Positions 20,510 to 64,000 of a stretch of DNA of 64,000 bases are shown piece after piece (the first letter of the stretch is position 1; each line of letters begins with the position of its first letter). Under the pieces are notes generated by a model, which saw only the letters and a list, made by a program, of their open reading frames with translations, had not been told where the DNA came from and did no database searches. The DNA lies in the IMG/VR virus record IMGVR_UViG_3300028569_002417, positions 124,001 to 188,000 of that record. One strand, written 5' to 3'. The translations under genes and the position numbers were made by a program.

Positions 20510-20519
20510 TTTAGCCTTG

Positions 20520-31879: not shown

Positions 31880-32883
31880 ATGATCTCTTCTTTTATCAAT
31901 TCTAAATTTGTAGATGAAATAAGTCCAGCGATAGGATATTTTCTTATGAGATTTTCAAAACCTTGAATAATTTGATCAGATTTAAGTTCTGTGATGCAAG
32001 GTTTTTGCATCTCTTTGCTTTTTGGGCAAACAATGCAAAGATAACATGGTCCGCATTCCCAATCGCCGTTATCACGATGTTTTTGCACAAGCTCAAAATC
32101 GTAATGTCTACCGTAAACCTTTCCATCAGTGAAAGAAAAAACACCAACTAGAGGTTTTTTTAACGCACCAGCAAGATGAAATGTTCCAGTATCAATTGAT
32201 ATTACATAATCTGCCGCTGCAACTAGCCCTTTCCAAGATTCAGGTTCAATTTTTATAAATTGTGGAATATTTATGCTTGTAAAAATTTCAAGAGGTTCAT
32301 TGTGAATGGTATAAACAAAAAATCCTTTATCACATAGTTTTTTGCATACTTCATATATTTGTGTGTCTGTTAAGCTTTTTGATTGTCCAAACATACATTT
32401 GGTTGATTTGGCCGCAACTAAAACCATTGGAAGCTTTTTAGTGTTTATTTCATATAATTTTTCAATATAAAATTCTTTTTCTTTGCATTCCATGAAGCAG
32501 TTATGGTTTGAAAGCTTAACACCACAATGATTGGCCCAGATATCGCTACGGTGAATGGTGTTTTTACCTCCCATTTTACTTTCATGCACACGACACACTG
32601 TCGTTATGTCATATGATGCTCCATATGTTCTTTCATTGATTTCTTCTATTGCCACTGTTTTTGCATAAGGATGATCTTTAGCAAATTCTAAATATGTTCT
32701 AGGACAGGCATATGTTAAATTAATTTCAGGCATTACCTTATGAAAATCTTCAAACATCATTCTTTGCATAATGATGTCGCCATATCCACCTGCTTTTCTC
32801 TTGATGAGGACTTTATTCCTTCTGAGAAAATGTTCTTTTATCGTGATTGGACAAATAGTTTTTTTCTTAACGTAAGGAAACAT
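31876..32883 (-). CDS. GT9 (heptosyltransferase-like) glycosyltransferase
   Basis: GGYGDIIM, ADYVISIDTGTFHLAGALKKPLVGVF. Confidence 0.85.
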   Translation of the reverse strand: MFPYVKKKTICPITIKEHFLRRNKVLIKRKAGGYGDIIMQRMMFEDFHKVMPEINLTYACPRTYLEFAKDHPYAKTVAIEEINERTYGASYDITTVCRVHESKMGGKNTIHRSDIWANHCGVKLSNHNCFMECKEKEFYIEKLYEINTKKLPMVLVAAKSTKCMFGQSKSLTDTQIYEVCKKLCDKGFFVYTIHNEPLEIFTSINIPQFIKIEPESWKGLVAAADYVISIDTGTFHLAGALKKPLVGVFSFTDGKVYGRHYDFELVQKHRDNGDWECGPCYLCIVCPKSKEMQKPCITELKSDQIIQGFENLIRKYPIAGLISSTNLELIKEEII

Positions 32884-33057
32884 ATATATCTTGTCTCTTT
32901 TTTACTACCTCAGTATTACAATTATACAAGTTCCAGCTGTCTGCATGGATGTTTGATCTTTATGTAATGCTTGAAACCCTAATGCAGGAAAAGGATGCTT
33001 CAAGGCACTTTTCAAAGGTAATTCAACTAAGTTTAATTGAAAACTTGAAATTGAGAC

Positions 33058-33089
33058 AGAGAGGTTAACCTTGTTGGTTCAACCTCTCT
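33058..33089 (-). terminator. hairpin immediately after the glf stop
   Basis: AGAGAGGTT/AACCTCTCT plus AACC/GGTT; no clear U-tract. Confidence 0.45.
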
Positions 33090-34212
33090 ATACAAATGTT
33101 CTAAACTTAGTTAATGCCGAAGCAATTGTCTGGTCGATGTCCAGATATTTATATTCACCAAGCCTTCCTCCAAAAGTAATTTCTTTGTGATTTGTTTTAA
33201 GATTGGCATATCTGTTGTATAAGTCACTGTTTTTATCATCTCTGATTGGGTAGTAAGGCTCAGGATGATCTTTGAATGCAACTGGGATGTCATAGGAAAC
33301 AACAGTTTCTTCTTTTGAATGTGGTTTTACTTCATAGTGTTTTGGAGCATTTTTGTAAAAATGCTTGTGTTCTATTGTTCTTATGTGTGGCACAGACATA
33401 TCTGTGTGGTTAAAAACAGCATTTCCTTGATAGTCACCATATATTGTTTTGTGTTCAAATCTTAAAGTGTTGTATTCCAAAGATCCAAACTCATAGTCGT
33501 AAAATTTATCTATCGGTCCTGTGTAAACCAGATGTTTGGCATAATCACGCCATTTGTTTCTAATTGTGAAAAAATCAGTGTTGAGTTCTGTTTTAATTCC
33601 ATCAAGCATATTTTTTATTGTTGCTGAGTATCCTTCATTTGGAATGCCTTGATATTTTGTTGTAAAATAATTTTCTTCATAAGTGAGTCTGATTGGCAGT
33701 CTCTGAATTATTGAGGATGGAAGATCTCTAGGTTCTTTCATCCATTGTTTTTTAGTGTATCCATAAAAGAATAATTCATAGATTTCCTTGCCAACTCTGT
33801 CTAAAGCCCATTCTTCAAAGTTTCTAGGATTTTCGCATGGTATTCGCACATCTTGTAGTTTGCGGTATGCTTCTTCTGGAGTGACAACTCCCCATAGTTG
33901 ATGAAGAGTCATCATGTTAATTGGAAATGAATAAACATTTCCTTGAGACAAAACTTTTGGTTTATTGATGAAAGGGTTGATTTTCGTGAATTTATTGATG
34001 AAATCCCATACTTCTTCGCTTTGAGTGTGGAATATGTGTGCTCCATATTCGCTTACAATGATGCCATTGTCCCATTTTCGGTCATATGTCGCACCAGCAA
34101 TGTGATTATTTTTATCAATTACAAGGCACTTTTTACCAGCATCTGCTGCTTTTCTTGCAAAGGTAGCGCCAAAGAATCCTGATCCCACAATCATGAAGTC
34201 AAATTCAGGCAT
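33088..34212 (-). CDS. glf: UDP-galactopyranose mutase
   Basis: IVGSGFFGA, HIAG, YGAHIFHT, YFTTKYQGIP, EPYYP, GRLGEYKYLD. Confidence 0.95.
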   Translation of the reverse strand: MPEFDFMIVGSGFFGATFARKAADAGKKCLVIDKNNHIAGATYDRKWDNGIIVSEYGAHIFHTQSEEVWDFINKFTKINPFINKPKVLSQGNVYSFPINMMTLHQLWGVVTPEEAYRKLQDVRIPCENPRNFEEWALDRVGKEIYELFFYGYTKKQWMKEPRDLPSSIIQRLPIRLTYEENYFTTKYQGIPNEGYSATIKNMLDGIKTELNTDFFTIRNKWRDYAKHLVYTGPIDKFYDYEFGSLEYNTLRFEHKTIYGDYQGNAVFNHTDMSVPHIRTIEHKHFYKNAPKHYEVKPHSKEETVVSYDIPVAFKDHPEPYYPIRDDKNSDLYNRYANLKTNHKEITFGGRLGEYKYLDIDQTIASALTKFRTFV

Positions 34213-40996: not shown

Positions 40997-42019
40997 ATGG
41001 ATTCTTACAAAGAACATATCAACTTAAACTGCCTCCGCAGGTTTGGTTCAGAAATTGAAATCAATGCTTTTGATTTTCGCAATAGACCAGTAGGTCATAA
41101 TGAGGGCAGAATGCCCGAAGGCACACACTATATAGCAAACTTAGTGCAAAAGTCATCTGGTAAAATTGTAAAAATACACAAGTGGTCTTATGATCATAAC
41201 AACAGTAATTGGATTATAAAGCCAGATAGCAGTTGCGGAATTGAAATATGCACACCAGTACTTAAGGGCTGGGTAGGTCTTATGGAGACTTGTAGGGTAA
41301 TTGATGCCCTTGGGAACGATAATAAAGTTCATGCCGATGATAGATGCAGTTTTCATGTTCATGTCGATGTGAGCGATCTTAGCGAGCAAGAATTGGCAAC
41401 GGTTATCACATGGTGGATTAAATGTGAACCTGTTTTTATGGATTCAGTTCCAATCAACAGGAAGAGAAATCAGTATTGCCAGCTTTTGGGACAGTCTGAA
41501 ATATTTGAAAATGTTGAGGACGGATTCCATCCAAATGATTATCTGATCAGAAGACTTGGCTCTTGTAAGTATTACACGATTAATACTTATCATTATCACA
41601 ACAATAAGCGTAAAACAATTGAATTCAGAATAATGGATGGAGATTGCTGTCTTGATCCTTGGATAGCTAAAAATTACATCAGACTTCTTCTCCATTTTAT
41701 TGATAGATCATTGAAGTATGGAATGCCTAGTTCATATTATCCGGGTGATAAGTGGTCTGGTTATTGTTGGCTTGATCCAAGAGATGTGTTAGATTTTCTT
41801 GGATTTAATGAAAAACATGTTCTTTCACCTGCATGCAAACAGGTTCATGAATGGTTTTTAGATCGTTTGCATATGAATTGTAATTACTCTAATAATCATG
41901 GGATTATGGGAAATAATGCAAGAAGATATGCTTATAAGGAAATAGAAGATCTTTGCGCTGAATATGGTGATATAAACATAAATCATGATGATATATTCAG
42001 CGATAAGTTTCGCACATAA
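40997..42019 (+). CDS. putative amidoligase (COOH.NH2 ligase type 2)
   Basis: FGSEIE, KPDSS, GIEICTPVL, FHVHV, KYYTIN, TIEFR. Confidence 0.85.
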   Translation: MDSYKEHINLNCLRRFGSEIEINAFDFRNRPVGHNEGRMPEGTHYIANLVQKSSGKIVKIHKWSYDHNNSNWIIKPDSSCGIEICTPVLKGWVGLMETCRVIDALGNDNKVHADDRCSFHVHVDVSDLSEQELATVITWWIKCEPVFMDSVPINRKRNQYCQLLGQSEIFENVEDGFHPNDYLIRRLGSCKYYTINTYHYHNNKRKTIEFRIMDGDCCLDPWIAKNYIRLLLHFIDRSLKYGMPSSYYPGDKWSGYCWLDPRDVLDFLGFNEKHVLSPACKQVHEWFLDRLHMNCNYSNNHGIMGNNARRYAYKEIEDLCAEYGDININHDDIFSDKFRT

Positions 42020-47183: not shown

Positions 47184-47828
47184 ATGAAGGTAATTGCAGC
47201 ACTCTCGCAAATGGCTCATGGAAAAGATGTTTTCTGTGATTATCTTTGCGAATGTCTTAATGATATTTCTTCTAAAAAAGAATGGACAAGAAGCGCATTT
47301 GCGAATGCAGTTAAAGATACTTTCTGCAACGCTTTTAATGTAGATCGTAATTTTATTGAGAATTGGAAAAGAAATTCTGAGGCTCCTGATGGATTTCTCA
47401 TGCCTATTCGTCAGTGTCTTCAGTTTATTGGAGATGGATATCGCAAAATCCGTGAAAATATTTGGATTGAAATTGCACTTAAAGATAATGGCAAAAACAT
47501 TATCATAAGCGATGGAAGATATTTCAATGAAGCAGAAGCAGTCAGAGAAAAGAATGGATTGATGTTTTTAATTTACAGACCCGGATTTATCAATGATGAT
47601 CCTAATCCAAGTGAATCACAAGTAAAACCATTGCTTCAATGGGCTTCTGGAAATTTGAAAGAAGGTCCTGTTGATTATTCAAGCAACATAATGAGATATG
47701 GAATAACTGTCCCACATGAATTGAGATATTTTGATTATTTCATCAAGAATGATGGAAGCATTGAGGATTTGCACAAGAAGATAAGGGAAGATGTTGTTCC
47801 TTTTGTGCTGAAAAAAATTAAAGGATGA
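47184..47828 (+). CDS. deoxynucleoside monophosphate kinase (T4 gp1/T5 dnk-like)
   Basis: GKDVF, RQCLQFIGD..R...NIWI, IISDGRYFNE, IYRPG...PSE. Confidence 0.8.
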   Translation: MKVIAALSQMAHGKDVFCDYLCECLNDISSKKEWTRSAFANAVKDTFCNAFNVDRNFIENWKRNSEAPDGFLMPIRQCLQFIGDGYRKIRENIWIEIALKDNGKNIIISDGRYFNEAEAVREKNGLMFLIYRPGFINDDPNPSESQVKPLLQWASGNLKEGPVDYSSNIMRYGITVPHELRYFDYFIKNDGSIEDLHKKIREDVVPFVLKKIKG

Positions 47829-48313
47829 TTATTTTTGAAGAAAAAGATGATAGGTTTTATATTGCAGAATCCAAGATAAAGGGTGCTGGTAGGGGAGTTT
47901 TTGCTTCTAGGAATATTAAAAAAGACGAATTTATTTTTATAAGTGGAGTATTAGTTGAAATAGGAAGCGAGTCTGATTCGACTACTTGTTTTATGAATAA
48001 CTATAAATTTGCTGCTGATCCAAAGTGGAATGGAAATTCTGTTGATATAGGCAAGTATGTGATATGTCCTTTGGGTTATGCTGCTTTGGTTAATCATAGT
48101 AATAGTCGTGAGGAGCAGAATGTTGAGATTAGGTATTTGGGTGAGAATTCTAAAAAGAATCATCATGGCAAGGCTGTTTATTGGTTCTTGAGGGATGTTG
48201 AAAAGGACGAGGAGATACTTGGAAACTATGGACCTATATGGTCAGGTTTCAAGAAGAAGATAAGATGTTATCGTCCTTTTTTCAGGATTGTGGGCAAGAA
48301 TGGTTCCTTGTGA
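47825..48313 (+). CDS. SET domain protein
   Basis: SKIKGAGRGVFASRNI, LVNHS, RDVEKDEEILGNYG. Confidence 0.85.
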   Translation: MIIFEEKDDRFYIAESKIKGAGRGVFASRNIKKDEFIFISGVLVEIGSESDSTTCFMNNYKFAADPKWNGNSVDIGKYVICPLGYAALVNHSNSREEQNVEIRYLGENSKKNHHGKAVYWFLRDVEKDEEILGNYGPIWSGFKKKIRCYRPFFRIVGKNGSL

Positions 48314-48442: not shown

Positions 48443-49114
48443 TTATCGATGAAGATTTTTGATTCTTTGTTTCAGTTTGCCCATACCCACTTCCGTCAAA
48501 ACCATAAATCCTAATCCTCTCTGCTGGCAATACTGGTTGCATGCTGTCCATTTCGCATTATTCCTTGGCAATGTTGTTTGGTTTGCCGGTTTGATTTCCC
48601 AAATTTCAATTCTTCCGTCATCGAACATAACTTTTAGATCAGGGTTATATTCATGAATATTCCCTTCAAATGTATATTGGACTTTAAGTGGTTCCACTTC
48701 ATATCCAATAACTTCTGGCATTGCTTCCAAGCATTCGTAGACATCGCATTCCATCCCTGATCGATAATGCATTTCCTTGCCGCCGTTCTTGTTGGACATC
48801 ATGTATCCTTCTCTGAACTTCGGCTTGCGTTGTTTAAGTTTACCAGTTTTTGCGGACTGGTCTTTCCATATAATAGCCTTCATCTGTCCGTTTTTCGGTA
48901 TATTTTTTTCATGCGGGTGTTTCGCTCTGTAATGAGTTCGTACACAACGAACGGGACAACCACAACGAGCAAGAGGACATAAAATGTATTCTCTGCCTTC
49001 TTCATGAGATTCAATGATATGTGTTTTATAGTCTTCAAAATTTTCATGAACAACTCCACACACAAAGCATGTGTATTTTCTTAGGCCATTATCTTTCGGG
49101 AATGGTAGCGTCAT
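48443..49114 (-). CDS. TnsA/gp4-like endonuclease with two N-terminal C2H2 zinc fingers
   Basis: CFVC...H...H; CPLARC...H...H; YRSGME, YNPDL, WEIKP; start ATG 49114 (ATGA overlap). Confidence 0.75.
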   Translation of the reverse strand: MTLPFPKDNGLRKYTCFVCGVVHENFEDYKTHIIESHEEGREYILCPLARCGCPVRCVRTHYRAKHPHEKNIPKNGQMKAIIWKDQSAKTGKLKQRKPKFREGYMMSNKNGGKEMHYRSGMECDVYECLEAMPEVIGYEVEPLKVQYTFEGNIHEYNPDLKVMFDDGRIEIWEIKPANQTTLPRNNAKWTACNQYCQQRGLGFMVLTEVGMGKLKQRIKNLHR

Positions 49115-49779
49115 AATAATTTCTTTCTTCCTTCTTTCCATCTTTCAAAATCATGTGGATAATCGAAGTCTTCAGTCCAATCGTCGATATGTGCTACATT
49201 TGGATGATATTTTACTTCTTCTATATCAGTGCATCCTGCCAAGTCAATGATTTCTTTATTTGTGAGCTTGGCCATGAGGTGATAATTCGACAGTCTCATG
49301 ATCTTTTTTTCAATAATTTCATCGATATAATTTGATATTATTTTATTCATATCTTTTTTGAAAGACAGGGCGAATGTTTCTTTATATTCGCATCCTGTGA
49401 AGCTTGATGGTGACAATCTGGCAACCCATCTCCAATCTAGTTCGTGATTAAAAATAAGATCAATTGCATTATCGGTGTAGTAGGCATCACCAGCCATGAG
49501 AACAGTTTCGCTGTCATTTGACCAAAGGAATTCTGAAGATTTGAAAATTGAACAATCTTCCCAATTTGGGTCTTGATGTGGTATTAGTAAATTGCATCCT
49601 TCAATTTTATATTTTTCATCAGATCCTACGATGTGAATGTCGTTGGTGTATTTTTTAACTTGTCGAACAATTCTTTCGATTAAAATTTCGCCTTCTATTT
49701 CAATGAAATGTTTTTTAACACAGAGATAATTATCCCATCTCTTTCCGTCTCCTCCAGCTTGTATTATGATTCTTTTCAT
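49111..49779 (-). CDS. NTP transferase (sugar/choline-phosphate nucleotidyltransferase-like)
   Basis: IIQAGGDGKRW, KHFIEIEGE.LIER, GDAYYT. Confidence 0.8.
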   Translation of the reverse strand: MKRIIIQAGGDGKRWDNYLCVKKHFIEIEGEILIERIVRQVKKYTNDIHIVGSDEKYKIEGCNLLIPHQDPNWEDCSIFKSSEFLWSNDSETVLMAGDAYYTDNAIDLIFNHELDWRWVARLSPSSFTGCEYKETFALSFKKDMNKIISNYIDEIIEKKIMRLSNYHLMAKLTNKEIIDLAGCTDIEEVKYHPNVAHIDDWTEDFDYPHDFERWKEGRKKLL

Positions 49780-51354: not shown

Positions 51355-52263
51355 ATGTCTGACATTATGGATTCTGTTGTCAATAAGACAATTAATTGCC
51401 TTGATAAAGGGCATGTGACTCTAGTCGATGTAATGCCAAGGAATGTTCCTGAAGGTAAAACTGCTGATTATGCCATTGTTCAGGCTGCGAGAGTAAGCTA
51501 TGGAGATGGAACTAAAACTGTCAATGAAGACCGTGGACTTATTCGTTACCTTCTCAGGCACCAACATACCACTCCATTAGAAATGGTAACCCTGAAATTT
51601 CATTGCAAGATGCCTATCTTTGTTTGCCGTCAATGGGCAAGGCACCGTATGAGTTCAACAAATGAAATTTCAGGTCGTTATTCGGTTATGAAAGACGAAT
51701 TTTATTTTCCTCAGGCCACTGATCTAAGATCCCAGTCTCAAATAAATAAACAAGGTGGAGAAGGCACTGTTGAGGAAATAACAGCTAACTATTCAGCAGG
51801 TAAAATTGCCGATAATTGCAATTCAGCTTATGATTTTTATGAATATATGATTCATGCAGGTGTTTCAAGAGAACAGGCAAGAATGGTTCTCCCTCTCAAC
51901 TTATACACAGAATTTTATTGGAAAATTGATCTTCACAATCTTTTTCACTTTTTGGCGCTAAGAGCAGATAGCCATGCCCAAAAGGAAATCAGAGTTTATG
52001 CAGAAGCAATTATTGAGATTTTACGCCAAATTGTTCCAGTAGCACTTGAAGCATGGGAAGATTATCATCCTATGCGTGGAGCAATAAAACTCACAAGACT
52101 CGAAACAGAAGCACTAAAAAGCTACATCCAGAAATTTCAATCTTTTGCTCATGCCGAATTCCAACATGTTGTCAGCGACAACAAGCGTGAACAGTCTGAA
52201 TGGATTGAGAAAGCCAAGATTCTTGGAATCAATGTTCCTCCGATAAAACAGAATGAGGCTTAG
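51355..52263 (+). CDS. thyX: flavin-dependent thymidylate synthase
   Basis: AARVSY, HTTPLE, RQWARHR...NEISGRY, EQARMVLP, LRADSHAQKEIR. Confidence 0.95.
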   Translation: MSDIMDSVVNKTINCLDKGHVTLVDVMPRNVPEGKTADYAIVQAARVSYGDGTKTVNEDRGLIRYLLRHQHTTPLEMVTLKFHCKMPIFVCRQWARHRMSSTNEISGRYSVMKDEFYFPQATDLRSQSQINKQGGEGTVEEITANYSAGKIADNCNSAYDFYEYMIHAGVSREQARMVLPLNLYTEFYWKIDLHNLFHFLALRADSHAQKEIRVYAEAIIEILRQIVPVALEAWEDYHPMRGAIKLTRLETEALKSYIQKFQSFAHAEFQHVVSDNKREQSEWIEKAKILGINVPPIKQNEA

Positions 52264-52356: not shown

Positions 52357-53748
52357 ATGAAAAGCATTTTGCAATTTCTCGAAAGTGATAAAAAAGGCCA
52401 AACTCTTAATATTGGAGTAATTGGCGATGCAATGATTGATGAATACTATGATGTTAAAATTAAAAGAATAAGTCCTGAATGCCCAATTCCCATCATGCAT
52501 AGCAAAGAACATGAACCAAAAATTCTTCCCGGCGGAGCCGCAAATGTCGTTCATCAATTCAAGAATTTTAATGCTAAAGTCAATCTTGGTTGCTTGTTAG
52601 ATTATAAAGCGAAAAGTATATTTGAAGATGCAAGAATCAATACTGATTATTCAGTAAATATTGCTCATGATATTTCTAGAAAGAGAAGATATTACAGCGA
52701 ACATATTCAGGTTGCAAGAATTGATATAGAAAAAAATAATTATGGTTTTAATGATGATGATTTGTTCTTAAAAACCGAATCTTTGTTTGATAAATTTGTT
52801 TTGAATGATTTTCAGGCTGTTATATTTTCAGATTATGGCAAAGGAATATTTAATTTTTTCAAAAATGAATATCTTAAAAAATTCCCAATCACAGTTGTTG
52901 ATCCAAAAAATGGTGATTTGACTCGTTGGCGTGGATGTACTGTTCTGAAACCAAATCAAGAAGAAGCATTGAAATTAAGTGGTAAAGATAATGTTCGTGA
53001 TGCTGGTCTTTATTTATCAGAATTATTGGAATGTTCTGTTGTCATTACTCAGGCAGCACAAGGAATTAGTGTTTTTGAAAAAGGTGGAATAACTGAGATA
53101 AGACCAACAGTAAGTCCTGCTGTTGCCGAATCTGTAATTGGCGCTGGAGATGCCTTTATAACATTCTTGACAATGGCAATGTGTAGGGGATTTTCTCTTC
53201 AAGAATCTGCTGATATTGCATTTAAGGCTGGAACATTATACGTTTTGAATAAGCATAACAAACCTTTAGATAGATTTTCCATTATTCACTCTATTGATTC
53301 AATTGGTGCAAAGGTTATACCTTATGATGAAACTAATATGTTTTGCAATAGAGATTATAAATTGGTTTTTACTAATGGCTGTTTTGATATCATGCATATG
53401 GGGCATATTGATTGCTTGAAATTTGCCAAATTACAAGGCGACAAACTTATGGTTGGATTGAATTCAGACGAGAGTGTCTCAAGATTAAAGCCCGGAAGAC
53501 CGATCATGTCGGTTAAGGATCGTGCCTCTGTTCTTGCAGCATGTGAATATGTTGATTATATTGTTGTTTTTGATGATGACACACCATTAGAACTTATCAA
53601 AAAGATCAGTCCTGATGTTTTAGTAAAGGGTGCAGATTATAAGGAAGAAGATGTTGTTGGTTATGGAATTGTCCCAGAAATAAAAAGATGTCCTCTTGTG
53701 GAAGGCATCAGCACAACAAACATTATTGAAAAAATTAAAAAACTTTAG
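52357..53748 (+). CDS. hldE: bifunctional heptose-7-phosphate kinase / heptose-1-phosphate adenylyltransferase
   Basis: GDAMIDEY, GGAANV, SDYGKG, PNQEE, GAGD; FTNGCFDIMHMGH, GLNSDESV, KGADY, STTNII. Confidence 0.9.
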   Translation: MKSILQFLESDKKGQTLNIGVIGDAMIDEYYDVKIKRISPECPIPIMHSKEHEPKILPGGAANVVHQFKNFNAKVNLGCLLDYKAKSIFEDARINTDYSVNIAHDISRKRRYYSEHIQVARIDIEKNNYGFNDDDLFLKTESLFDKFVLNDFQAVIFSDYGKGIFNFFKNEYLKKFPITVVDPKNGDLTRWRGCTVLKPNQEEALKLSGKDNVRDAGLYLSELLECSVVITQAAQGISVFEKGGITEIRPTVSPAVAESVIGAGDAFITFLTMAMCRGFSLQESADIAFKAGTLYVLNKHNKPLDRFSIIHSIDSIGAKVIPYDETNMFCNRDYKLVFTNGCFDIMHMGHIDCLKFAKLQGDKLMVGLNSDESVSRLKPGRPIMSVKDRASVLAACEYVDYIVVFDDDTPLELIKKISPDVLVKGADYKEEDVVGYGIVPEIKRCPLVEGISTTNIIEKIKKL

Positions 53749-57437: not shown

Positions 57438-58526
57438 TTATTTTCTTTTCAGCAAGCGACTTTCCTGATAAAACCATTCTTTGAAATTTAACTTTTGTTC
57501 TGCCATTTTGCCTAAATTTCTCTGACCGACTAACGATCTTATTGATTTAGCATATCCTTCAGGATCTCTATTGTAACTGGGATTTGAGAATGGTAAATTT
57601 TCTTTTCTTGGCTCATTACTCATTGGAACGCCTTGAGTAGGATGATATCGTACTTGTTTAACTAAAGAAGCAGCACCACTCATTACGTCTTTTATTGGAA
57701 CAGTTCCTAAATCAGGTGTTGAAACATATACTTCTAACGATCTTTTTGTTTCTAAAAGTTTTCTTCTCTCTGCTTGCAGATTGTCTATGCTCTGATTGAT
57801 TTTTTCGTCAATGTTTAGACCTCTTGGGTCTTTTTTTCCTAATTGTTTCTCAAGATCAAGTACCCACTTGTCCAATTCACTAATTCTATCAAATTTGGTT
57901 CTGTCTAAACTTATAATTTGATCATATTCATTTTGTAAATTTTTTATACTTGATCTGATGTGTTCTTCGCTGTCGTATTTGAATTCTTTATTTTTTAATT
58001 TCTCTTCTTGAGAAGATATCCATTTTAGTAATTCTTGTGTTCTTATATATTTTTCTTCATCCAAACCTGATTTAATCTTATGATTATCTAAGCTTATAAG
58101 CTTTTCATTTATCAATGCGTTTAAGCAAGGAATTAGTTCTTTTTTCAACATGTTGCCAGAAGCAGATTTTTCGTCCCAAAAACTTACAATAATTTTATTT
58201 ATACTTCTATTACCATAGCCAATTCTTCCCATCACCATATGATCATATATGTCTTTATTGTTTCGATAGCTTGCTGCTAAATCTTTTTTTCTATCTTTTA
58301 CAGAAGCTAATCCTTTTTTTCTTAAATCTTTTTCAAGCTCATCTTCAGATAGTTCTCCATATATCTTTTTAAGTTCGTTAAGAATAAATTCATTATCTTT
58401 AATAATATGGACGTGAGTGTCGGAGGATATTTTACTGTAAAATAACCTATTCTTAAACCATATAAAAGTAATCATGTTGTCATAATCATTATGGTAATCA
58501 TACATTTCATCAGGACTTTTGTACAT
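57438..58526 (-). CDS. hypothetical protein, paralog of 58613-60007
   Basis: MGRIG...IIVSFW...LIPCLN; coiled-coil insert; C-terminal LNFKEWFYQES. Confidence 0.8.
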   Translation of the reverse strand: MYKSPDEMYDYHNDYDNMITFIWFKNRLFYSKISSDTHVHIIKDNEFILNELKKIYGELSEDELEKDLRKKGLASVKDRKKDLAASYRNNKDIYDHMVMGRIGYGNRSINKIIVSFWDEKSASGNMLKKELIPCLNALINEKLISLDNHKIKSGLDEEKYIRTQELLKWISSQEEKLKNKEFKYDSEEHIRSSIKNLQNEYDQIISLDRTKFDRISELDKWVLDLEKQLGKKDPRGLNIDEKINQSIDNLQAERRKLLETKRSLEVYVSTPDLGTVPIKDVMSGAASLVKQVRYHPTQGVPMSNEPRKENLPFSNPSYNRDPEGYAKSIRSLVGQRNLGKMAEQKLNFKEWFYQESRLLKRK

Positions 58527-58612
58527 AATTTTTTCCTTAAATTTCTCTTATACGATCTGGCGTTATAGCATAAATAACGGGTCCCAAATTTCTTCCTAAT
58601 TTATCTTTTCTT

Positions 58613-60007
58613 TCACATTAATGCTATCTTTTCTGGAGTAGTAATATGACCCTGAGCTCCTAGCAGATCGTTTGTGATAATTATTTGTTTTCCGTTAAAA
58701 ATGCCGCCGGATAATGTCCCATTCCTTTTCATTTCATAGAATGCTTTGAATTTTTCTTGAGAATAATTTCCGTAAAATGTGGCTAATGGCCTATTTTTAA
58801 GTTCTTTTGCGAGTTGTTCTTTATCACATTTTTTTGCAAAATCAGAATTTTCAATTACTTTTTCAACAGATAAGCCATCAGGAACAATTCTGCCAACAAT
58901 ATCTTCATTGCCCCCTCTTGATAGCGCATACCAAGCTTGCTGCGCTCTTTTTGCAGCACCATATGAAATTTTGTCAAGATAGGTGATGTAGTCGGAATGA
59001 CTCATATTATATCTGGGTGCTATTCCTAAACCATCAGTAGTTTTTTCACCGTTTATTTCCTTGTCGCCATTAAAGTAAAAAAATGATTTGTGAGAATTTG
59101 CCATCTTGCCATCAGATATTGCTGATGGATTAAGTAGTTGTTTTTTGAACAACTCTACAATAATTTTTTTCATATATGAGCTTATTTCCCAATCTTCCAT
59201 TTTTTCAAAATTTACTTTTTCCGTTTGAATATTATTGTCAGATGCAGGAATTGCACTAGGTGCGTAGCCAAGTTTTTTACCTAGTTCTTCTTTTTCAGAT
59301 GGCGTCATAACTTTTCCATTTGGCCATCTACCTTGATGAAAAGCAAGCATTTCTGCCGTTTTATCTTTTTCATCTTCTTTGTTATAAGTCATTGATCCGC
59401 CACCAATGTAATAAGTGATCGGACGCAATGGTTCATTTGGTATTGCAACAAATATATTTTCAATTTTACTAAAAAATACCTTGCCACCTTGATTAACCAT
59501 ATCGTTCAGGCAAGGTATAAGAAGAGTATCATATAGTTTTTTGCCCGTATTTCTCAATCCTTTTTTATGTAAATAGCCACTTTCTTTTTGCTGTTCATCA
59601 GAATTACTATTCCAAAAAGAAACAATTGTTGCATATTCTTTATTGTCTGCTCCTAATTTTGAAAGAGCTTTTAATATTGGTTCATTTTTTTGATAAGGAT
59701 TATCTTTTATATGCTTTTTATAATTTTCTAAAGGAAGATAAGAATATCTTCCAATTAAGCAAAATTGCATCAAATCATCATTAAAGTCAGCCCACAAATC
59801 ATCGCCATATTCTTTTTTTAATGATTCGTAATTGTAAGCCATGATATCTTGGTGCGTTCCTCCTTCATAGTATTTATTTCCTATGGTGTAAACAAATCCT
59901 TTTTTTCTCATTCCTTCTATATCAAAAGACAATGCTTCGAGTGTGTGAGGGCTTATATTGCTGCTTTCCTCACTTAACAACCATTTTCTAAAACTTAAAT
60001 TAATCAT
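58613..60007 (-). CDS. hypothetical protein with capsid-targeting-like N-terminus
   Basis: MINLSFRKWLLSEE; IGRY...IVSFW...LIPCLN. Confidence 0.8.
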   Translation of the reverse strand: MINLSFRKWLLSEESSNISPHTLEALSFDIEGMRKKGFVYTIGNKYYEGGTHQDIMAYNYESLKKEYGDDLWADFNDDLMQFCLIGRYSYLPLENYKKHIKDNPYQKNEPILKALSKLGADNKEYATIVSFWNSNSDEQQKESGYLHKKGLRNTGKKLYDTLLIPCLNDMVNQGGKVFFSKIENIFVAIPNEPLRPITYYIGGGSMTYNKEDEKDKTAEMLAFHQGRWPNGKVMTPSEKEELGKKLGYAPSAIPASDNNIQTEKVNFEKMEDWEISSYMKKIIVELFKKQLLNPSAISDGKMANSHKSFFYFNGDKEINGEKTTDGLGIAPRYNMSHSDYITYLDKISYGAAKRAQQAWYALSRGGNEDIVGRIVPDGLSVEKVIENSDFAKKCDKEQLAKELKNRPLATFYGNYSQEKFKAFYEMKRNGTLSGGIFNGKQIIITNDLLGAQGHITTPEKIALM

Positions 60008-60122
60008 GAATTTATGTATAGGTTTTCAAAAAAATATTCTCAGATTTGTTCTTGATTTGTTGTTATCTTATAATTAATCTGGGAAGCCGTGGAAACCCAA
60101 AAAGCCGACAATCGGAGTAATC

Positions 60123-62201
60123 ATGACAAGCAAACTTAAAAAAGCAATTGTAAATTTCAATCGGGATCAATTCCGTGCAATTAACACAGAAATGTCATTT
60201 GGCGAATATCTTGACTTGTGTTATGAAAATCCAAAACTTCTTCGTAACTCATGGCAAACCATTTATGACATGATTATGGATAAGGGCAGCTACACAATCG
60301 AAGAGTATCGCAAGACTTATGTGAATTATAAGTTTTTCGATGATCCAGATTGTCCAATCGTTGGCTTGGCTCCAATGAAAGATGCACTCGTTAAGTTCAT
60401 CAAGGGTGCAGCTGGAGGATATGGCACAGAACGAAGAATCCTTCTTCTCCACGGTCCTGTTGGCTCAAGTAAGTCCACAATTCTTCGTCTTTTTAAGCGC
60501 AGTATGGAGAAATATAGCCATACAGAAGAAGGATCTTGGTACAGCTTCAAATGGGTAAACCTACCTACAGGACCAGATGGCATTTATAATGATCCTGAAT
60601 GCGAATGCCCAATGCATGAACAACCTCTTAAACTTTTGCCTGTTGATATTCGTGGACCAATTCTTTTTGAACTAAATAAAATTCACGAACAACAGACATC
60701 AGAAGAACAAAGATCTGATATTTATACACTCAAGTGCGCTGATGAACTTGATCCTCTTTGCAAAAAGTTCATGACTGTTCTTCTCAAGAAGTATGACGGC
60801 GATATTGAGAAGGTCCTAGAAAATCACATCAGAGTTATCCGCAAAGTCTACTCAGAAGCTGATCGTTGCGGAATTGCAACATTCCAGCCAAAAGATGAGA
60901 AAAATCAAGATAGCACCGAACTTACAGGAGATATAAATTTCCGTAATATTGGTAATTTCGGTAGCGATTCTGATCCAAGAGCATTCAACTTTGATGGTGA
61001 ATTTTGTGTCGGCAACAGAGGAATCATCGAGTTTATTGAAGCTCTAAAGCTTGATACTGCTTTCCTTTATGATCTTCTTGGTGCTTCTCAAGAACAAAGC
61101 ATCAAGCCTAAGAAGTTTGCTCAGGTAAGTATCGATGAGGCAATCTGGTGCCATACCAATGATCCAGAATTCCAGAAGTTGAAATCAAATCAATACATGG
61201 AAGCTTTCCGTGATCGCACGACAAAGATTGATGTTCCTTACACTCTGAGGTGGAGCGAAGAGCTTAGAATCCTTGAGAAGGATTACGGTCCCGGTAAGGT
61301 TCGTCAGCACATCGCCCCTCACACTCTTGAGATTGCCGCTCTTTGGAGCATTCTCACTCGTCTTGCTGATGACAAAGATGGCAAACTCAGCTTGGTCGAG
61401 AAGGCAGAACTTTATGACGGCAAGCTTCTTCCCGGTTGGACAGAAGACAGTGTTAAAGAACTAAAGGACAAGTATCCTGATGAAGGTATGAACAGTGGAG
61501 TATCAGTTCGATACCTTCAGGATAAGATATCCAACTGTCTTGCGAATAATCATGATTATGTGAATATGTTCATGGTTTTGAACGAACTTCGTGATGGACT
61601 TGAAAATAGTAGTCTTCTTACCAATAAGGAACAGGTGAGTCGATACATTACATGTGTTGATTTGGCGGTGAAAAAGTTGACAGAAATACTTAAAAATGAG
61701 GTTCAAAAAGCTCTTGTCGGCGACAAGGAAGCTGTTAAGCGTCTTTGCACAAATTATATTGACAACGTGATGGCTTATATCAATAAGAATAAAATTAAGG
61801 ACCAAATCACTGGTCAAGATCGCAAGCCAGATGAAAGGCTTATGCGTCAAATCGAAGAAAAGATTCAAATCCCAGATACTGGATGCGATGACTTCCGCCG
61901 CCAAATCGCAGCTTTCATTGGTCATCTTGCTCATGAAGGCAAGACATTCGCTTGGGACAGTAATCCAAAGCTAAGGAAGGCTCTTGAGGCAAAGCTCTTT
62001 GAAGATGTCCGTGATACTATCAAGCTTTCTGCCTTGACAATGAGTGGAGCAGCAGTCGTTGATAAGGACTTGCAGGAAAAGATCGATGCAGTCAAGACAA
62101 GACTTGTTAAGGATTTTGGATATAACGACAGGTCTGCCACAGACGTTTTGGACTTTGTTTCCGGTATATTCTCCAGAGGCGACTTAGCCGAAGACGAATA
62201 A
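60123..62201 (+). CDS. prkA: PrkA/YeaG AAA+ serine protein kinase
   Basis: LLLHGPVGSSKST, CPMHEQPL, FQPKDEKNQDSTEL, DPRAFNFDGE, NRGIIEFIE, EAFRDR. Confidence 0.95.
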   Translation: MTSKLKKAIVNFNRDQFRAINTEMSFGEYLDLCYENPKLLRNSWQTIYDMIMDKGSYTIEEYRKTYVNYKFFDDPDCPIVGLAPMKDALVKFIKGAAGGYGTERRILLLHGPVGSSKSTILRLFKRSMEKYSHTEEGSWYSFKWVNLPTGPDGIYNDPECECPMHEQPLKLLPVDIRGPILFELNKIHEQQTSEEQRSDIYTLKCADELDPLCKKFMTVLLKKYDGDIEKVLENHIRVIRKVYSEADRCGIATFQPKDEKNQDSTELTGDINFRNIGNFGSDSDPRAFNFDGEFCVGNRGIIEFIEALKLDTAFLYDLLGASQEQSIKPKKFAQVSIDEAIWCHTNDPEFQKLKSNQYMEAFRDRTTKIDVPYTLRWSEELRILEKDYGPGKVRQHIAPHTLEIAALWSILTRLADDKDGKLSLVEKAELYDGKLLPGWTEDSVKELKDKYPDEGMNSGVSVRYLQDKISNCLANNHDYVNMFMVLNELRDGLENSSLLTNKEQVSRYITCVDLAVKKLTEILKNEVQKALVGDKEAVKRLCTNYIDNVMAYINKNKIKDQITGQDRKPDERLMRQIEEKIQIPDTGCDDFRRQIAAFIGHLAHEGKTFAWDSNPKLRKALEAKLFEDVRDTIKLSALTMSGAAVVDKDLQEKIDAVKTRLVKDFGYNDRSATDVLDFVSGIFSRGDLAEDE

Positions 62202-62217
62202 TAAAATAACTAATATT

Positions 62218-62261
62218 AAAAATAATTGACGGTAATGTTAAAGTTACCGTCAATTATTTTT
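62218..62261 (+). terminator. rho-independent terminator after prkA
   Basis: AATAATTGACGGTAA/TTACCGTCAATTATT stem with A- and T-runs. Confidence 0.75.
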
Positions 62262-62269
62262 AGCTAGGT

Positions 62270-62298
62270 TTGCTTTATCGAAATCAATGGTTTATAAT
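62270..62298 (+). promoter_or_regulatory. sigma70-type promoter
   Basis: TTGCTT, 17 nt, TATAAT. Confidence 0.6.
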
Positions 62299-62342
62299 TT
62301 GATAAAGGCCAATCTTTGGCTTATCCGCTAAGAGGAATTATC

Positions 62343-62558
62343 ATGCAAAACCATTGGTTAGGTACTGCCCAAAGCAGGCAACTCATGAAAGAAATTGATG
62401 ATGTTGCTTTGGATATTTGGGCTCAAGATGGCACTCTTGGCGATCTTTTAGCAGCACTTACTGATGATCATACTGACCTTTTATTCGCAATGAAAATTAA
62501 AGATTTTACAAGTGATTCAAATAATGTTACTTGTGGAATCGAACTTATTTCTCCTTGA
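62343..62558 (+). CDS. small hypothetical protein
   Basis: ATG 62343 after SD GAGG; 71 aa. Confidence 0.6.
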   Translation: MQNHWLGTAQSRQLMKEIDDVALDIWAQDGTLGDLLAALTDDHTDLLFAMKIKDFTSDSNNVTCGIELISP

Positions 62559-62599
62559 ACATTAACAAGTACTGAGAGCTAAAAAAATAGAGGTGATTC

Positions 62600-63826
62600 A
62601 TGCCAAGAAGAATAGAGGAGGATTGGTCACATTTTCGTGATGTTGTTTCTGGACGAATCCGTAAGGCTCTCAAGAAATTTATAAAAAGTGGACAAATTGT
62701 AAAAAATCGTGGGAAAAATGGCAAAATTTCCATCACAATCCCAAAGATTGATATCCCTCATATTGTCTACGGAAGCAACGGTGAAGGTGTTGGACGTGGA
62801 CAAGGCAAAGAAGGCGATGTTATCGGTAAAGATCCAAAGAACGGAAAAGGAAAAGGAAATAGCGCAGGACAAGGTGAATCAGAAGGAATCACCATCAACC
62901 TCGATCTTGATGAAGTCCTAAAATTCATGCAGTATGAGCTTCAACTTCCTAATCTGAAGAAGAAGCCTAATGAAATTTATGATGAAATAAAAATTAAATA
63001 TAACAATATTTCTTTGATTGGTCCTGAGTCCCTCAGACACAATCGTCGTACTCTTATGCAAACACTTAAGCGTCAGGCTGCTGAAGGAACTCTTGATAAG
63101 ATGAAGTATGTGGCAGGAGTCAAAGATCCTGTTCGTGTTCTTCAGCCAATCAATGAAGATAAGCGTTACAGACAGTTCAACGAAATAAAGATTCCAAGCA
63201 GCAATGCACTTATTGTTTTCGCCCGTGATGGATCTGGATCTATGGATCAAGCTAAATGTGAAATCGTAAGCGATATGGCTTGGTGGATTGATGTCTGGAT
63301 TCGTCGATTCTATGACAGAGTTGATCGCCTCTACGTCTGGCATGACAGCGAAGCAATGGAAGTAGATGAGCAAAAGTTTTATAAGTATCGATTCGGAGGA
63401 GGAACAACTTGTTCTTCAGCATTAAAATTTGTCACTAAACAATTTGAAAACAGATATCCTCCAAATAAATGGAACATTTATGTTTTCTATTTCACAGATG
63501 GCGAAAATTGGGGTGAAGATAATCAAATATTCATCAATTCTTTAGCTGAAGATTTCAAACCTCATGTAGTTAATTTTACAGGAATCACTCAGATTCTTGC
63601 TTCAAGTTATAATGATTCAGTCAAATTTCATGTTGATGAAGCAATCAAATCAGGAAAATTAGATAAAGAATGCGTTCGCACAGTTGCAATTGGAGGAAGC
63701 CCCGATGGAAAATCGATGTGGTCTGCCCCAGCTTTGAGCGAAGAAAATAGAAACGAACAAGTAATTGAGGCTATTCAACAATTATTGGGCAATTCAAATA
63801 AAATAGTTCAGGATTACAAGGATTGA
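62600..63826 (+). CDS. yeaH: DUF444 / YeaH-YhbH family protein (vWA-like)
   Basis: IPKIDIP...YG, GVGRGQG, RDGSGSM, WHDSEA, GGTTCSS, WNIYVFYFTDGENW. Confidence 0.92.
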   Translation: MPRRIEEDWSHFRDVVSGRIRKALKKFIKSGQIVKNRGKNGKISITIPKIDIPHIVYGSNGEGVGRGQGKEGDVIGKDPKNGKGKGNSAGQGESEGITINLDLDEVLKFMQYELQLPNLKKKPNEIYDEIKIKYNNISLIGPESLRHNRRTLMQTLKRQAAEGTLDKMKYVAGVKDPVRVLQPINEDKRYRQFNEIKIPSSNALIVFARDGSGSMDQAKCEIVSDMAWWIDVWIRRFYDRVDRLYVWHDSEAMEVDEQKFYKYRFGGGTTCSSALKFVTKQFENRYPPNKWNIYVFYFTDGENWGEDNQIFINSLAEDFKPHVVNFTGITQILASSYNDSVKFHVDEAIKSGKLDKECVRTVAIGGSPDGKSMWSAPALSEENRNEQVIEAIQQLLGNSNKIVQDYKD

Positions 63827-63835
63827 GGACTCATC

Positions 63836-64000
63836 ATGTCAAGTAAATTCTTTCACGGCTCAAGTCTTCTACTTGGTGATAACACCGTTCCCGGTGTTCA
63901 ATTATCAAAAGAACTTAAAGAGTATATCCCTGTAATTCTTAAAGCCTGCCGTGATTGGGGACTCGATTTCTATCCAACCGTTGTTCAACTTCTGACATAT
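63836..64000 (+). CDS. spoVR: SpoVR/YcgB family protein, 5' part (runs off window)
   Basis: MSSKFF...ILKACRDWGLDFYPTVVQLLTY; directly after yeaH. Confidence 0.75.
   Translation, partial: MSSKFFHGSSLLLGDNTVPGVQLSKELKEYIPVILKACRDWGLDFYPTVVQLLTY

What the first reader, a model, noticed from the sequence alone, without database searches (positions are those of the whole stretch)
60123..64000. Phage carries the PrkA(YeaG)-YeaH-SpoVR stress/dormancy locus
All three genes of this conserved bacterial module occur in canonical order inside a clearly phage gene context; prkA and yeaH are complete with intact motifs and spoVR is cut by the window edge. Established: E. coli yeaG/yeaH act in long-term nitrogen-starvation survival; Bacillus prkA and spoVR act in sporulation. 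Inference: the phage reprograms host dormancy signalling, or uses the AAA+/vWA pair as a remodelling machine. I know of no functional study of a phage-encoded version.
Basis: partly seen in the sequence, partly recalled or inferred. Interest (0 to 1): 0.8.

Follow-up and report, generated by a model that had tools for sequence, protein, structure and literature searches.

The report
Phage-borne PrkA–YeaH–SpoVR starvation module
A large uncultured phage really does carry the bacterial PrkA–YeaH–SpoVR stress module as a conserved, vertically inherited part of its genome; other sequenced phages have it too, so its presence is not new, but what it does in any phage is untested.

Summary
prkA (60123-62201) and yeaH (62600-63826) are complete. 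spoVR starts at 63836 and runs off the window.

Contigs identical to the window show the full spoVR. It has 932 codons because a 403-aa LAGLIDADG intein sits in an invariant SpoVR motif.

The join near 60 kb is not chimeric. At least seven assemblies link the trio to the same phage genes. The only difference is a 2.6-kb two-gene cassette (57438-60021) that some haplotypes lack.

The trio is present, in order, in all 74 assessable IMG/VR loci. On trees of all three proteins the viral sequences form one group apart from bacteria. It is under strong purifying selection.

It is not new as an occurrence. Thermus phages phiYS40, MN1 and Lalka27a/b and Ralstonia phage RsoM2USA carry it. In Lalka27a its first gene is a middle gene with its own promoter.

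The "kinase / dormancy signalling" reading is outdated. PrkA is an AAA+ machine, and E. coli YeaG drives starvation-induced bulk proteolysis.

Best inference, untested: the phage uses the module to turn over host protein during infection.

The parts
60022..60082 (+). Promoter-like element upstream of prkA (TTGTTC-N17-TATAAT, with TATAAT at 60069-60074). It is conserved between haplotypes with and without the upstream cassette, whereas the 5' UTR that follows (60083-60113) differs.
   Evidence: Sequence read. Alignment of the window with L005. It falls below the threshold of the consensus scan and is not repeated elsewhere in the window, so its function is inferred only.
60123..62201 (+). prkA/yeaG homologue, 692 aa. 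It has an AAA+ (PrkA-type) ATPase domain plus the PrkA C-terminal domain. GGAG sits 7 nt upstream of the ATG.
   Evidence: Pfam hits. phrog_22605 7.5e-104. PDB 9xip 'Serine protein kinase' E 3.4e-210 over residues 16-685. Walker A at 111-118, NRGIIEFIE at 298-306, HTND at 344. Zero amino-acid changes across 5-15 changed codons versus three ~99% haplotypes.
62216..62263 (.). Perfect 21-bp hairpin with flanking T/A runs just after the prkA stop. It looks like a bidirectional terminator and separates prkA from the downstream genes.
   Evidence: terminator-like site; MFE -25.8 kcal/mol, z -7.25, 0 of 200 shuffles as good.
62343..62558 (+). 71-aa acidic ORF of unknown function with its own Shine-Dalgarno motif (AGAGGA). 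It is conserved only in the closer phage relatives (35-55% identity; a 73-aa ORF at the same place in an 87% relative).
   Evidence: No Pfam, PHROGs, PADLOC or Atlas lead.
62600..63826 (+). yeaH/yhbH homologue (DUF444), 408 aa, with a vWA domain and MIDAS DGSGS at 210-214.
   Evidence: 55% identity to the LR756511.1 orthologue. All 6-9 nucleotide differences versus three haplotypes are synonymous.
63836..64000 (+). First 55 codons of spoVR/ycgB. The full gene (932 codons, L003:13714-16512) continues beyond the window and holds a 403-aa class 1 intein with a LAGLIDADG endonuclease at NEGWA|S.
57438..60021 (-). Context, not part of the module. A 2.6-kb low-GC cassette of two minus-strand ORFs (362 and 464 aa, no family hits). 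It is present in the window, L003 and L004 and absent in L005-L008. This is the only discontinuity near 60 kb.
   Evidence: No terminal repeats of note.

Best explanation
Shown. This is a complete, expressed-looking prkA - small ORF - yeaH - spoVR module in the genome of a large uncultured tailed phage. It was inherited vertically as a block within a broad lineage of large and huge phages. It is kept under strong purifying selection. Inteins have invaded it at ATPase and SpoVR core motifs. Inferred. The three proteins act together as in bacteria. PrkA is a hexameric AAA+ (clade III, pore-loop) unfoldase or remodeller. YeaH is its vWA/MIDAS partner or adaptor. SpoVR is an effector with a conserved His/His/Glu site. 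The phage makes them during infection, in the middle phase by analogy with Thermus phage Lalka27a. Their job would be to switch on, independently of host RpoS, the YeaG-type starvation programme of bulk cytoplasmic protein turnover. That would convert host proteins into amino acids and energy for making a very large virion and genome in nutrient-poor cells. It would be the protein counterpart of phage-driven host DNA degradation.
For: Identity: Pfam, NCBIfam, PHROGs and PDB matches. Integral to the phage: the exact PrkA occurs on at least 15 contigs, and seven loci from JGI, ENA, Logan and IMG/VR assemblies show the same flanking phage genes. An 87%-identity relative is syntenic on both sides, from ThyX and HldE upstream to DNA pol III alpha downstream. 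Conserved block: 74 of 80 IMG/VR loci have prkA-yeaH-spoVR in order, and none with at least 5 kb of room lacks it. Single origin: viral PrkA, YeaH and SpoVR each form one side of one branch against bacteria of many phyla (PrkA SH-aLRT 95 with a stem of 1.08 changes per site; YeaH and SpoVR 100). Selection: 0 amino-acid changes in PrkA and YeaH versus three haplotypes with 5-17 nucleotide differences per gene, and dN/dS about 0.04 versus 87-90% relatives. Motifs are intact. Inteins sit at sensor-1-like and Walker-B-proximal sites of PrkA in relatives and at the invariant IYEMVVN|T and NEGWA|S sites of SpoVR; this fits conserved, functionally constrained sites. Joint action in bacteria: yeaG, yeaH and ycgB show cofitness r>0.7 in six species (10.1101/072470). 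Activity: YeaG is required for nonspecific starvation-induced proteolysis of cytoplasmic proteins (PMC13684143). PrkA is an AAA+ protein with a pore loop (PMC13001217) and has reported ATP-dependent casein degradation (PMC9512850). Expression in a phage: Lalka27a gene 12 (the DUF444 gene heading the 12-13-14 trio) is a middle gene with its own sRNA-seq-supported promoter P12-M (10.64898/2026.04.20.719267).
Against: No experiment exists on any phage copy. The biochemical activity of PrkA is disputed: pure B. anthracis PrkA had neither protease nor kinase activity (PMC13001217). How YeaG causes proteolysis is unknown. The roles of YeaH and SpoVR in it have not been shown. The SpoVR fold could not be assigned (AF2 pLDDT 77.6; no Foldseek or profile hit in the PDB), so calling it an effector with a metal site rests only on invariant H73, E96, H123, H127 and E293. 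The host and its physiology are unknown. Bacterial mutant phenotypes of the trio differ between species (10.1101/072470). In Thermus phages the trio lies between portal/minor head genes and TerL, which could hint at another role. The bacterial sample in the trees is only the 80 most similar GTDB hits, and the trees are unrooted.
Confidence: 0.42

Rival explanations
1. Signalling takeover. The phage copy acts as a regulator (a kinase or a regulated AAA+ switch) that pushes the host into, or holds it out of, a dormancy or stationary-phase state. It would not degrade protein in bulk.
For: This is the historical annotation of PrkA/YeaG as a Ser kinase. Price et al. proposed a conserved signalling pathway from the cofitness data (10.1101/072470). 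B. subtilis and B. anthracis prkA mutants change expression of sporulation genes (PMC9512850, PMC13001217).
Against: Kinase activity was not reproduced in two studies (PMC9512850, PMC13001217). No kinase catalytic motifs were tested or seen here. The host is probably not a spore former (HldE-like gene; inference). The newest genetics ties YeaG to proteolysis (PMC13684143).
Confidence: 0.2
2. Targeted counter-defence or host shut-off. The AAA+/vWA machine recognises and removes specific host proteins (defence systems, regulators, nucleoid or ribosome-hibernation factors), not the bulk proteome.
For: vWA/MIDAS partners of AAA+ ATPases usually act as substrate adaptors (general knowledge of MoxR-vWA pairs). 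The middle-phase timing in Lalka27a would fit. A variable small ORF and inserted genes sit between prkA and yeaH in relatives.
Against: No PADLOC or anti-defence family hit for any of the proteins. The extreme conservation (0 amino-acid changes; dN/dS about 0.04) is unlike fast-evolving counter-defence genes. Reported YeaG-dependent proteolysis is largely nonspecific (PMC13684143).
Confidence: 0.13
3. Phage-directed chaperone or assembly factor. The module remodels phage proteins (capsid, portal or another large assembly), not host proteins.
For: In Thermus phages the trio lies between portal/minor head genes and the large terminase. AAA+/vWA pairs often mature large complexes (general knowledge).
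Against: Lalka27a gene 12 has its own promoter and is a middle gene, unlike the late structural genes around it. In the window and its relatives the neighbours are nucleotide, sugar and replication genes (ThyX, HldE-like, pol III alpha), not structural genes. The bacterial orthologues work without any phage.
Confidence: 0.12
4. Artefact. The trio belongs to a bacterial chromosome and was joined to phage DNA by misassembly or binning, or it is a decaying passenger.
For: GC is slightly higher at 60-64 kb (0.38-0.40) than at 58-60 kb (0.31). A structural polymorphism lies right upstream of prkA. One relative (L009) sits in a bacterial MAG bin.
Against: The same junctions appear in at least seven assemblies, with phage genes on both sides. 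GC of 0.38-0.44 occurs elsewhere in the window. Viral sequences are monophyletic for all three genes. Purifying selection is strong. L009 is a 546-kb contig that nests inside the viral clade, so it is most likely a misbinned phage. Read mapping itself could not be run.
Confidence: 0.02

Closest known systems
E. coli YeaG (SpdA) - YeaH - YcgB
   Same: Same three Pfam families (AAA_PrkA + PrkA, DUF444, SpoVR). Walker A and MIDAS motifs are kept. The three genes act together in bacteria (cofitness, 10.1101/072470). YeaG drives starvation-induced proteolysis (PMC13684143).
   Different: The phage PrkA scores only 213.7 bits against the NCBIfam YeaG equivalog model (cutoff 576). E. coli splits the genes into yeaGH and ycgB and puts them under RpoS. 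The phage copy has its own promoter-like element, a terminator hairpin and an extra ORF after prkA, and an intein in SpoVR.
Bacillus subtilis / B. anthracis PrkA - YhbH - SpoVR
   Same: Homologous trio. The PrkA Walker A lysine is needed for function (PMC9512850). PrkA is AAA+ clade III with a pore loop (PMC13001217).
   Different: In Bacillus the genes are sporulation-controlled in endospore formers. The phage YeaH reaches 201.7 bits against the YhbH equivalog (cutoff 468). Nothing suggests a sporulating host here.
Thermus phages phiYS40/TMA, MN1, Lalka8/27a/27b
   Same: Cultured phages with all three families. Lalka27a gene 12 is a middle gene with its own promoter.
   Different: Only 27-31% PrkA identity to the window. 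The gene order is rotated (yeaH-spoVR-(x)-prkA). The genomes are 69-178 kb and the module sits next to portal and TerL. phiYS40 lies on a very long branch outside the huge-phage clade, which probably means a separate acquisition.
Ralstonia jumbo phage RsoM2USA ORF30-29-28
   Same: Canonical order prkA-yeaH-spoVR in a cultured 344-kb phage (PMC8504454).
   Different: 25.6% PrkA identity to the window. Its proteins are of the proteobacterial YeaG/YcgB type (SpoVR 56% identical to a Vibrio protein, per the paper). The GenBank record labels them hypothetical.
Uncultured huge phage LR756511.1 (595 kb) and IMG/VR relatives
   Same: Same viral clade of PrkA, YeaH and SpoVR (66/55/about 57% identity) and same order.
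   Different: SpoVR there has no intein. The prkA-yeaH spacer differs. The record is not annotated.
PDB 9xip/9xiq/9xir 'Serine protein kinase' (692 aa)
   Same: The closest solved relative of the phage PrkA, aligned over residues 16-685 with E 3.4e-210. The Walker A, FQPKDEKNQDSTELTGDIN and DSDPRAFNFDGE blocks are shared.
   Different: The source organism and paper are unknown to me. The phage protein has an 8-residue insertion near residue 150, and F-G where the solved protein has Y-G before DSDPRAF.
SpoVR-like intein of Chloroflexus aurantiacus J-10-fl (InBase)
   Same: An intein in a SpoVR-family host protein is known (10.1101/2025.01.02.630785). Here four Chloroflexota loci carry an insert at the same NEGWA|S site, and in L019 it is 43% identical to the window intein.
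   Different: The published one is described with an antisense LAGLIDADG gene. The phage intein has an in-frame LAGLIDADG_3 domain. I found no phage-borne SpoVR inteins, or the second site (N100|T101), in the literature I could search.

Membership tests
PrkA/YeaG family (Pfam PF08298 + PF06798) | N-terminal PrkA-type AAA domain and C-terminal PrkA domain, both above the Pfam gathering score | tested here: met
   249.5 bits each against a cutoff of 25.
PrkA/YeaG family | Intact nucleotide-binding motifs (Walker A Lys, Walker-B-like acidic block, sensor-1-like HTN) | tested here: met
   GPVGSSKS at 111-118, NRGIIEFIE at 298-306, HTND at 344. They align with the same blocks in PDB 9xip.
PrkA/YeaG family | Equivalog of E. 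coli YeaG (NCBIfam NF011999 cutoff) | tested here: not met
   213.7 bits against a cutoff of 576. It is a family member but not a YeaG equivalog; it belongs to a subfamily nearer the 9xip type.
PrkA/YeaG family | ATPase, unfoldase or proteolysis-promoting activity | not testable with these tools
   Needs biochemistry. The literature on bacterial orthologues is contradictory (PMC9512850 versus PMC13001217).
YeaH/YhbH (DUF444, PF04285) | DUF444 domain above the gathering score, with a vWA MIDAS motif (DxSxS) | tested here: met
   215.5 bits against a cutoff of 27. DGSGS at 210-214. The NCBIfam equivalog cutoffs are not reached (314.2 against 388).
SpoVR/YcgB (PF04293) | SpoVR domain | tested here: met
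   Not detectable in the 55 codons inside the window. The full gene in the identical contig L003 scores 327.5 bits (1.3e-97) in two pieces around the intein, plus SpoVR_C.
SpoVR/YcgB | Family-invariant residues kept (H73, E96, N100, H123, H127, N292-E293-G294 in the numbering of the L121 orthologue) | tested here: met
   26-sequence alignment A1. The window/L003 exteins carry PHW, IYEMVVN, HATGHNDFFKNN and NEGWA|S.
prkA-yeaH-spoVR operon | The three genes adjacent, on the same strand, in this order | tested here: met
   Two departures: a terminator-like hairpin and a 71-aa ORF between prkA and yeaH.
Class 1 intein with homing endonuclease | Cys1, C-terminal His-Asn, +1 Ser/Thr/Cys, a Hint splicing domain and two LAGLIDADG motifs, inserted in frame in a conserved host motif | tested here: met
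   C297...HN699|S700. Intein_splicing 41.8 bits (cutoff 35.8) and LAGLIDADG_3 73 bits (cutoff 22.5). GYMIGDGHI and SYFDCDGYA motifs. An intein-free orthologue is colinear across the site. Splicing itself was not tested.
Tailed phage genome (not host DNA) | Phage-type genes on the same contig, viral classification, and reproducible junctions | tested here: met
   (phage-type single-strand DNA binding protein, UvsX-like, DnaB-like, PolA, collagen tail-fibre-like). (IMG/VR UViGs of 168 and 225.5 kb).. No terminase, portal or capsid gene lies inside the 64-kb window itself.
Known anti-phage defence systems (PADLOC) | Match to a defence-system protein model | tested here: not met
   No meaningful hit for PrkA, YeaH, SpoVR, the small ORF or the two cassette proteins.

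The most novel reading that the evidence does not exclude
A whole lineage of large and huge phages encodes its own RpoS-independent version of the bacterial starvation-induced bulk proteolysis machine and uses it to liquidate the host proteome for virion production in starved cells. SpoVR, whose two intein sites sit beside its invariant Glu/Asn and Asn-Glu-Gly motifs, would be the missing catalytic (metal-dependent) partner of the PrkA unfoldase.
Probability: 0.2. Interest if true: 0.8.

Novelty: new member of a known kind. Interest (0 to 1): 0.5.

Why it matters
The PrkA/YeaG-YeaH-SpoVR trio is among the most widespread bacterial stress modules whose mechanism is still unknown. Only in 2026 was YeaG linked to global protein degradation in starvation.

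Phages that keep the trio as a conserved, selected and separately promoted unit offer an independent handle on what the three proteins do together. Cultured Thermus phages and a Ralstonia jumbo phage make this testable at the bench.

If the phage copy does drive host protein recycling, it would be a new class of auxiliary function. It would do for protein what host-DNA degradation does for nucleotides. It would also help explain how very large phages replicate in nutrient-poor cells.

The intein sites in PrkA and SpoVR mark residues that are likely critical and worth mutating first.

Tried and rejected
I used independent assemblies instead.
- Megablast of 58-64 kb against the phage collection: no match.
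- SpoVR fold: the AF2 model was moderate, with a low-confidence stretch at residues 63-95. Foldseek against the PDB gave nothing below E 1. A profile search of the PDB gave nothing. I therefore make no fold-based functional claim.
- PADLOC: no defence link.
- The 71-aa ORF: no lead from Pfam, PHROGs, PADLOC or the Atlas.
- Cassette proteins and the downstream 1046-aa protein: no family or phage-database hit.
- Shared phage promoter motif: the prkA upstream element occurs only once in the window. Sigma-70-like sites in 57-64 kb are no more frequent than in shuffles.
- A third SpoVR intein site near residue 41/42, suggested by tblastn splits, proved to be an alignment artefact. The real N-terminal site is N100|T101.
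- Enterobacter phage LAU1 'YeaG/YeaH' lie at the very start of a 30.8-kb record next to tail genes. I take them as host flank of a prophage, not as a phage-borne module.
- Host identification: no tRNAs in the window and no close cultured-phage relative (RecA-like at most 30% identical). Cluster look-ups gave no organism names.
- The phiYS40 genome/virion paper (PMC1773054) is not held, so I could not check whether the proteins are in virions.

Full report
**What is in the sequence**

The region holds four forward-strand ORFs, each with a Shine-Dalgarno-like motif.

- prkA, 60123-62201, 692 aa.
- A 71-aa ORF, 62343-62558.
- yeaH, 62600-63826, 408 aa.
- The first 55 codons of a fourth gene, starting at 63836.

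PrkA matches both PrkA Pfam domains at about 1e-74. YeaH matches DUF444 at 1.8e-63. NCBIfam places both in the right families but below the equivalog cutoffs.

Motifs are intact:
- PrkA Walker A GPVGSSKS (111-118).
- PrkA Walker-B-like NRGIIEFIE (298-306).
- PrkA HTND (344).
- YeaH MIDAS DGSGS (210-214).

The 55-codon fragment has no HMM hit by itself. It is 49% identical to the start of a 537-aa SpoVR in the same position of the 595-kb uncultured phage LR756511.1.

A perfect 21-bp hairpin follows the prkA stop (-25.8 kcal/mol, z -7.25). So prkA may be transcribed apart from the small ORF, yeaH and spoVR.

**Beyond the window edge**

The exact PrkA protein is on at least 15 public contigs. L003 (JGI 3300028571, a 168-kb contig) and L004 (Logan SRR8441840) are 100% identical to the window over 13-14 kb and run past its end.

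There spoVR has 932 codons. Two SpoVR pieces (PF04293, 1.3e-97) flank a 403-aa class 1 intein. The intein starts with Cys297 and ends with His-Asn699, and Ser700 follows. It contains a LAGLIDADG_3 endonuclease. It sits in the motif TLNEGWA|S.

**Is the join at about 60 kb chimeric?**

It is not. Independent assemblies answer the question instead.

- Seven loci (L003-L008 and L089) from JGI, ENA, Logan and IMG/VR assemblies link the trio to the same upstream phage genes. Those that extend far enough also share the downstream genes.
- Four ~99%-identical haplotypes (L005-L008) lack window 57438-60021. This is a low-GC cassette of two minus-strand ORFs with no family hits. In those haplotypes prkA is joined directly to the preceding phage genes.
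- A promoter-like element (TTGTTC-N17-TATAAT, 60046-60074) is conserved in both haplotypes. The 5' UTR after it differs.
- A relative with 87% PrkA identity is syntenic on both sides. The order is SET, TnsA-like, ThyX, HldE-like, Zn-ribbon, prkA, a 73-aa ORF, DUF444, an intein-free SpoVR, a ~1030-aa protein and pol III alpha.

**Phage context**

The window encodes several phage-type genes:
- a DnaB-like helicase,
- a family A polymerase,
- a UvsX/RecA-like recombinase,
- a phage-type single-strand DNA binding protein (PHROGs),
- helicases,
- two collagen-repeat proteins that hit tail-fibre PHROGs.

The contig is in IMG/VR as UViGs of 168 and 225.5 kb. No terminase, portal or capsid gene lies within these 64 kb. 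No cultured phage is close; the RecA-like protein is at most 30% identical to any.

**How common is the module in phages?**

- tblastn finds PrkA in 17 phage records.
- Pfam confirms all three families in Thermus phages phiYS40, MN1 and Lalka27b, in rotated order, and in Ralstonia jumbo phage RsoM2USA, in canonical order. Lalka27a carries the same syntenic block in its annotation.
- PHROGs already has a family for each protein.
- In IMG/VR, 149 contigs encode close relatives. Of the best 80 loci, 74 have the full trio in order, and none with at least 5 kb of room lacks it.
- The 5.8-billion-protein search returned more than 120 clusters at 75-100% identity, on contigs up to 513 kb.

So the occurrence is known and widespread. 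I found no functional work on any phage copy.

**Origin and selection**

Among GTDB genomes the best true bacterial PrkAs are only 52-55% identical. They are spread over Calditrichota, Chloroflexota, Myxococcota, Bdellovibrionota, Planctomycetota and Acidobacteriota. The single 66% hit is a 546-kb contig binned as Bacteriovoracaceae.

In an ML tree all 58 viral PrkAs plus that contig form one clade on a long stem (1.08 changes per site, SH-aLRT 95). phiYS40 lies on a separate, very long branch. FastTree trees of YeaH and SpoVR give the same split with 100% support.

This fits one old acquisition of the block followed by vertical descent in this lineage, with separate acquisitions in Thermus and Ralstonia phages. 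Two caveats apply: the trees are unrooted, and the bacterial sample is biased towards the nearest hits.

Purifying selection is strong:
- Against three haplotypes, PrkA has 5-15 changed codons and no amino-acid change.
- All YeaH differences are synonymous.
- dN/dS is about 0.04 against 87-90% relatives.
- The intein evolves faster than the exteins, with dN about 0.016 against 0-0.005.

**Inteins as markers**

SpoVR has two intein sites in this phage lineage.
- NEGWA|S is occupied in 17 of 74 loci.
- IYEMVVN|T is occupied in 13 of 74 loci. The intein there begins with Cys, ends with His-Asn, and is followed by Thr.
- Nine loci carry both.

Both sites adjoin family-invariant residues (E96, N100; N292-E293-G294; alignment A1). 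Four Chloroflexota bacteria carry an insert at the first site. That agrees with the known Chloroflexus SpoVR-like intein (10.1101/2025.01.02.630785).

PrkA relatives carry inteins at three sites:
- DEAIWCH|TNDPE, which is sensor-1-like,
- FNFDGEF|CVGNRG, just before the Walker-B-like block,
- a site before FNFDGE.

Inteins typically lodge in highly conserved, functionally critical sites (general knowledge). They therefore flag these motifs as important.

**How it probably works**

Bacterial evidence:
- The three genes act together; cofitness is r>0.7 in six species (10.1101/072470).
- PrkA showed no kinase activity in two studies. It has been reported as an ATP-dependent protease (PMC9512850). 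It has also been reported as a pore-loop AAA+ clade III protein without intrinsic protease activity (PMC13001217).
- E. coli YeaG is required for nonspecific, starvation-induced degradation of cytoplasmic proteins, which feeds stress-protein synthesis (PMC13684143).

Evidence from a phage:
- In Thermus phage Lalka27a, gene 12 is the DUF444 gene that heads the 12-13-14 trio.
- It has its own sRNA-seq-supported promoter (P12-M) and belongs to the middle class.
- It nevertheless sits between late structural genes and TerL.

I therefore infer, at about 40% confidence, that the phage makes its own PrkA unfoldase, YeaH vWA partner and SpoVR effector to drive host protein turnover during infection. 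This would supply amino acids and energy when the host is nutrient-limited.

What is shown: identity, integrity, conservation, selection, and expression timing in one cultured relative. What is inferred: the substrate (host proteome), the benefit, and the roles of YeaH and SpoVR.

The SpoVR fold could not be assigned. The closest solved PrkA (PDB 9xip, E 3.4e-210) has no paper I could find.

**Rivals and verdict**

The rival readings are:
- signalling takeover,
- targeted removal of host proteins,
- a role in phage assembly,
- an assembly artefact.

They are weighed in the Rival explanations section, and the artefact reading is essentially excluded.

The finding is real and is a sound, testable lead. 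It is a new member of a known kind, not a new kind of system.

Noticed in passing
L003:14602-15810 (just beyond the window end; the spoVR start is window 63836): spoVR carries a 403-aa LAGLIDADG intein at NEGWA|S. Relatives have a second SpoVR intein site (IYEMVVN|T), and some carry both, giving ORFs of about 1370 aa. Four Chloroflexota bacteria share the first site.
   Followed up: yes
Proteins P0002, P0054, P0069, P0081, P0112 (relatives of window 60123-62201): PrkA orthologues at 82-100% identity carry inteins at three sites in the ATPase core: DEAIWCH|TNDPE, FNFDGEF|CVGNRG, and a site before FNFDGE.
   Followed up: partly
window 57438-60021: A 2.6-kb low-GC (about 31%) cassette of two minus-strand ORFs (362 and 464 aa). 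It has no family or phage-database hits and no terminal repeats. It is present or absent among ~99% identical haplotypes, directly upstream of the prkA promoter-like element.
   Followed up: partly
window 62343-62558 and 62216-62263: A conserved 71-aa acidic ORF of unknown function and a very stable hairpin are inserted between prkA and yeaH. In other relatives this spacer holds 0.7-2.7 kb of extra genes (for example a 552-aa ORF in L009).
   Followed up: partly
window 14348-18094 and 18119-20539 (minus strand): Two very large collagen-triple-helix-repeat proteins (1248 and 806 aa) hit tail-fibre PHROGs. The repeats cause strong GC/AT skew and many spurious overlapping ORFs.
   Followed up: no
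window 639-6289, 31876-34212, 52357-53748: A cluster of sugar-related genes: glycosyltransferases, a triple methyltransferase-domain protein, UDP-galactopyranose mutase, and a bifunctional PfkB kinase / cytidylyltransferase-like (HldE-like) enzyme. This suggests cell-surface glycan or LPS-type metabolism and hints at a Gram-negative host.
   Followed up: no
window 40997-42019; 47825-48313; 48443-49141; 51355-52263: An amidoligase-like protein, a SET-domain protein, a TnsA-like endonuclease N-domain protein and ThyX are encoded in the same window.
   Followed up: no
window 25297-26631: The family A DNA polymerase ORF (444 aa) matches only the C-terminal part of the Pfam model (positions 101-379). 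The polymerase may be split or shortened.
   Followed up: no
L009 (CALFYV010000090.1, 546 kb): A contig binned in a 'Bacteriovoracaceae' MAG of GTDB carries the trio and nests inside the viral PrkA clade. It is probably a huge-phage genome misassigned to a bacterial bin.
   Followed up: partly
L172 (Enterobacter phage LAU1, MN688132.1:1-3308): This record begins with YeaG and YeaH next to lambda-like tail genes. They look like host flanking DNA of a prophage rather than phage genes.
   Followed up: no
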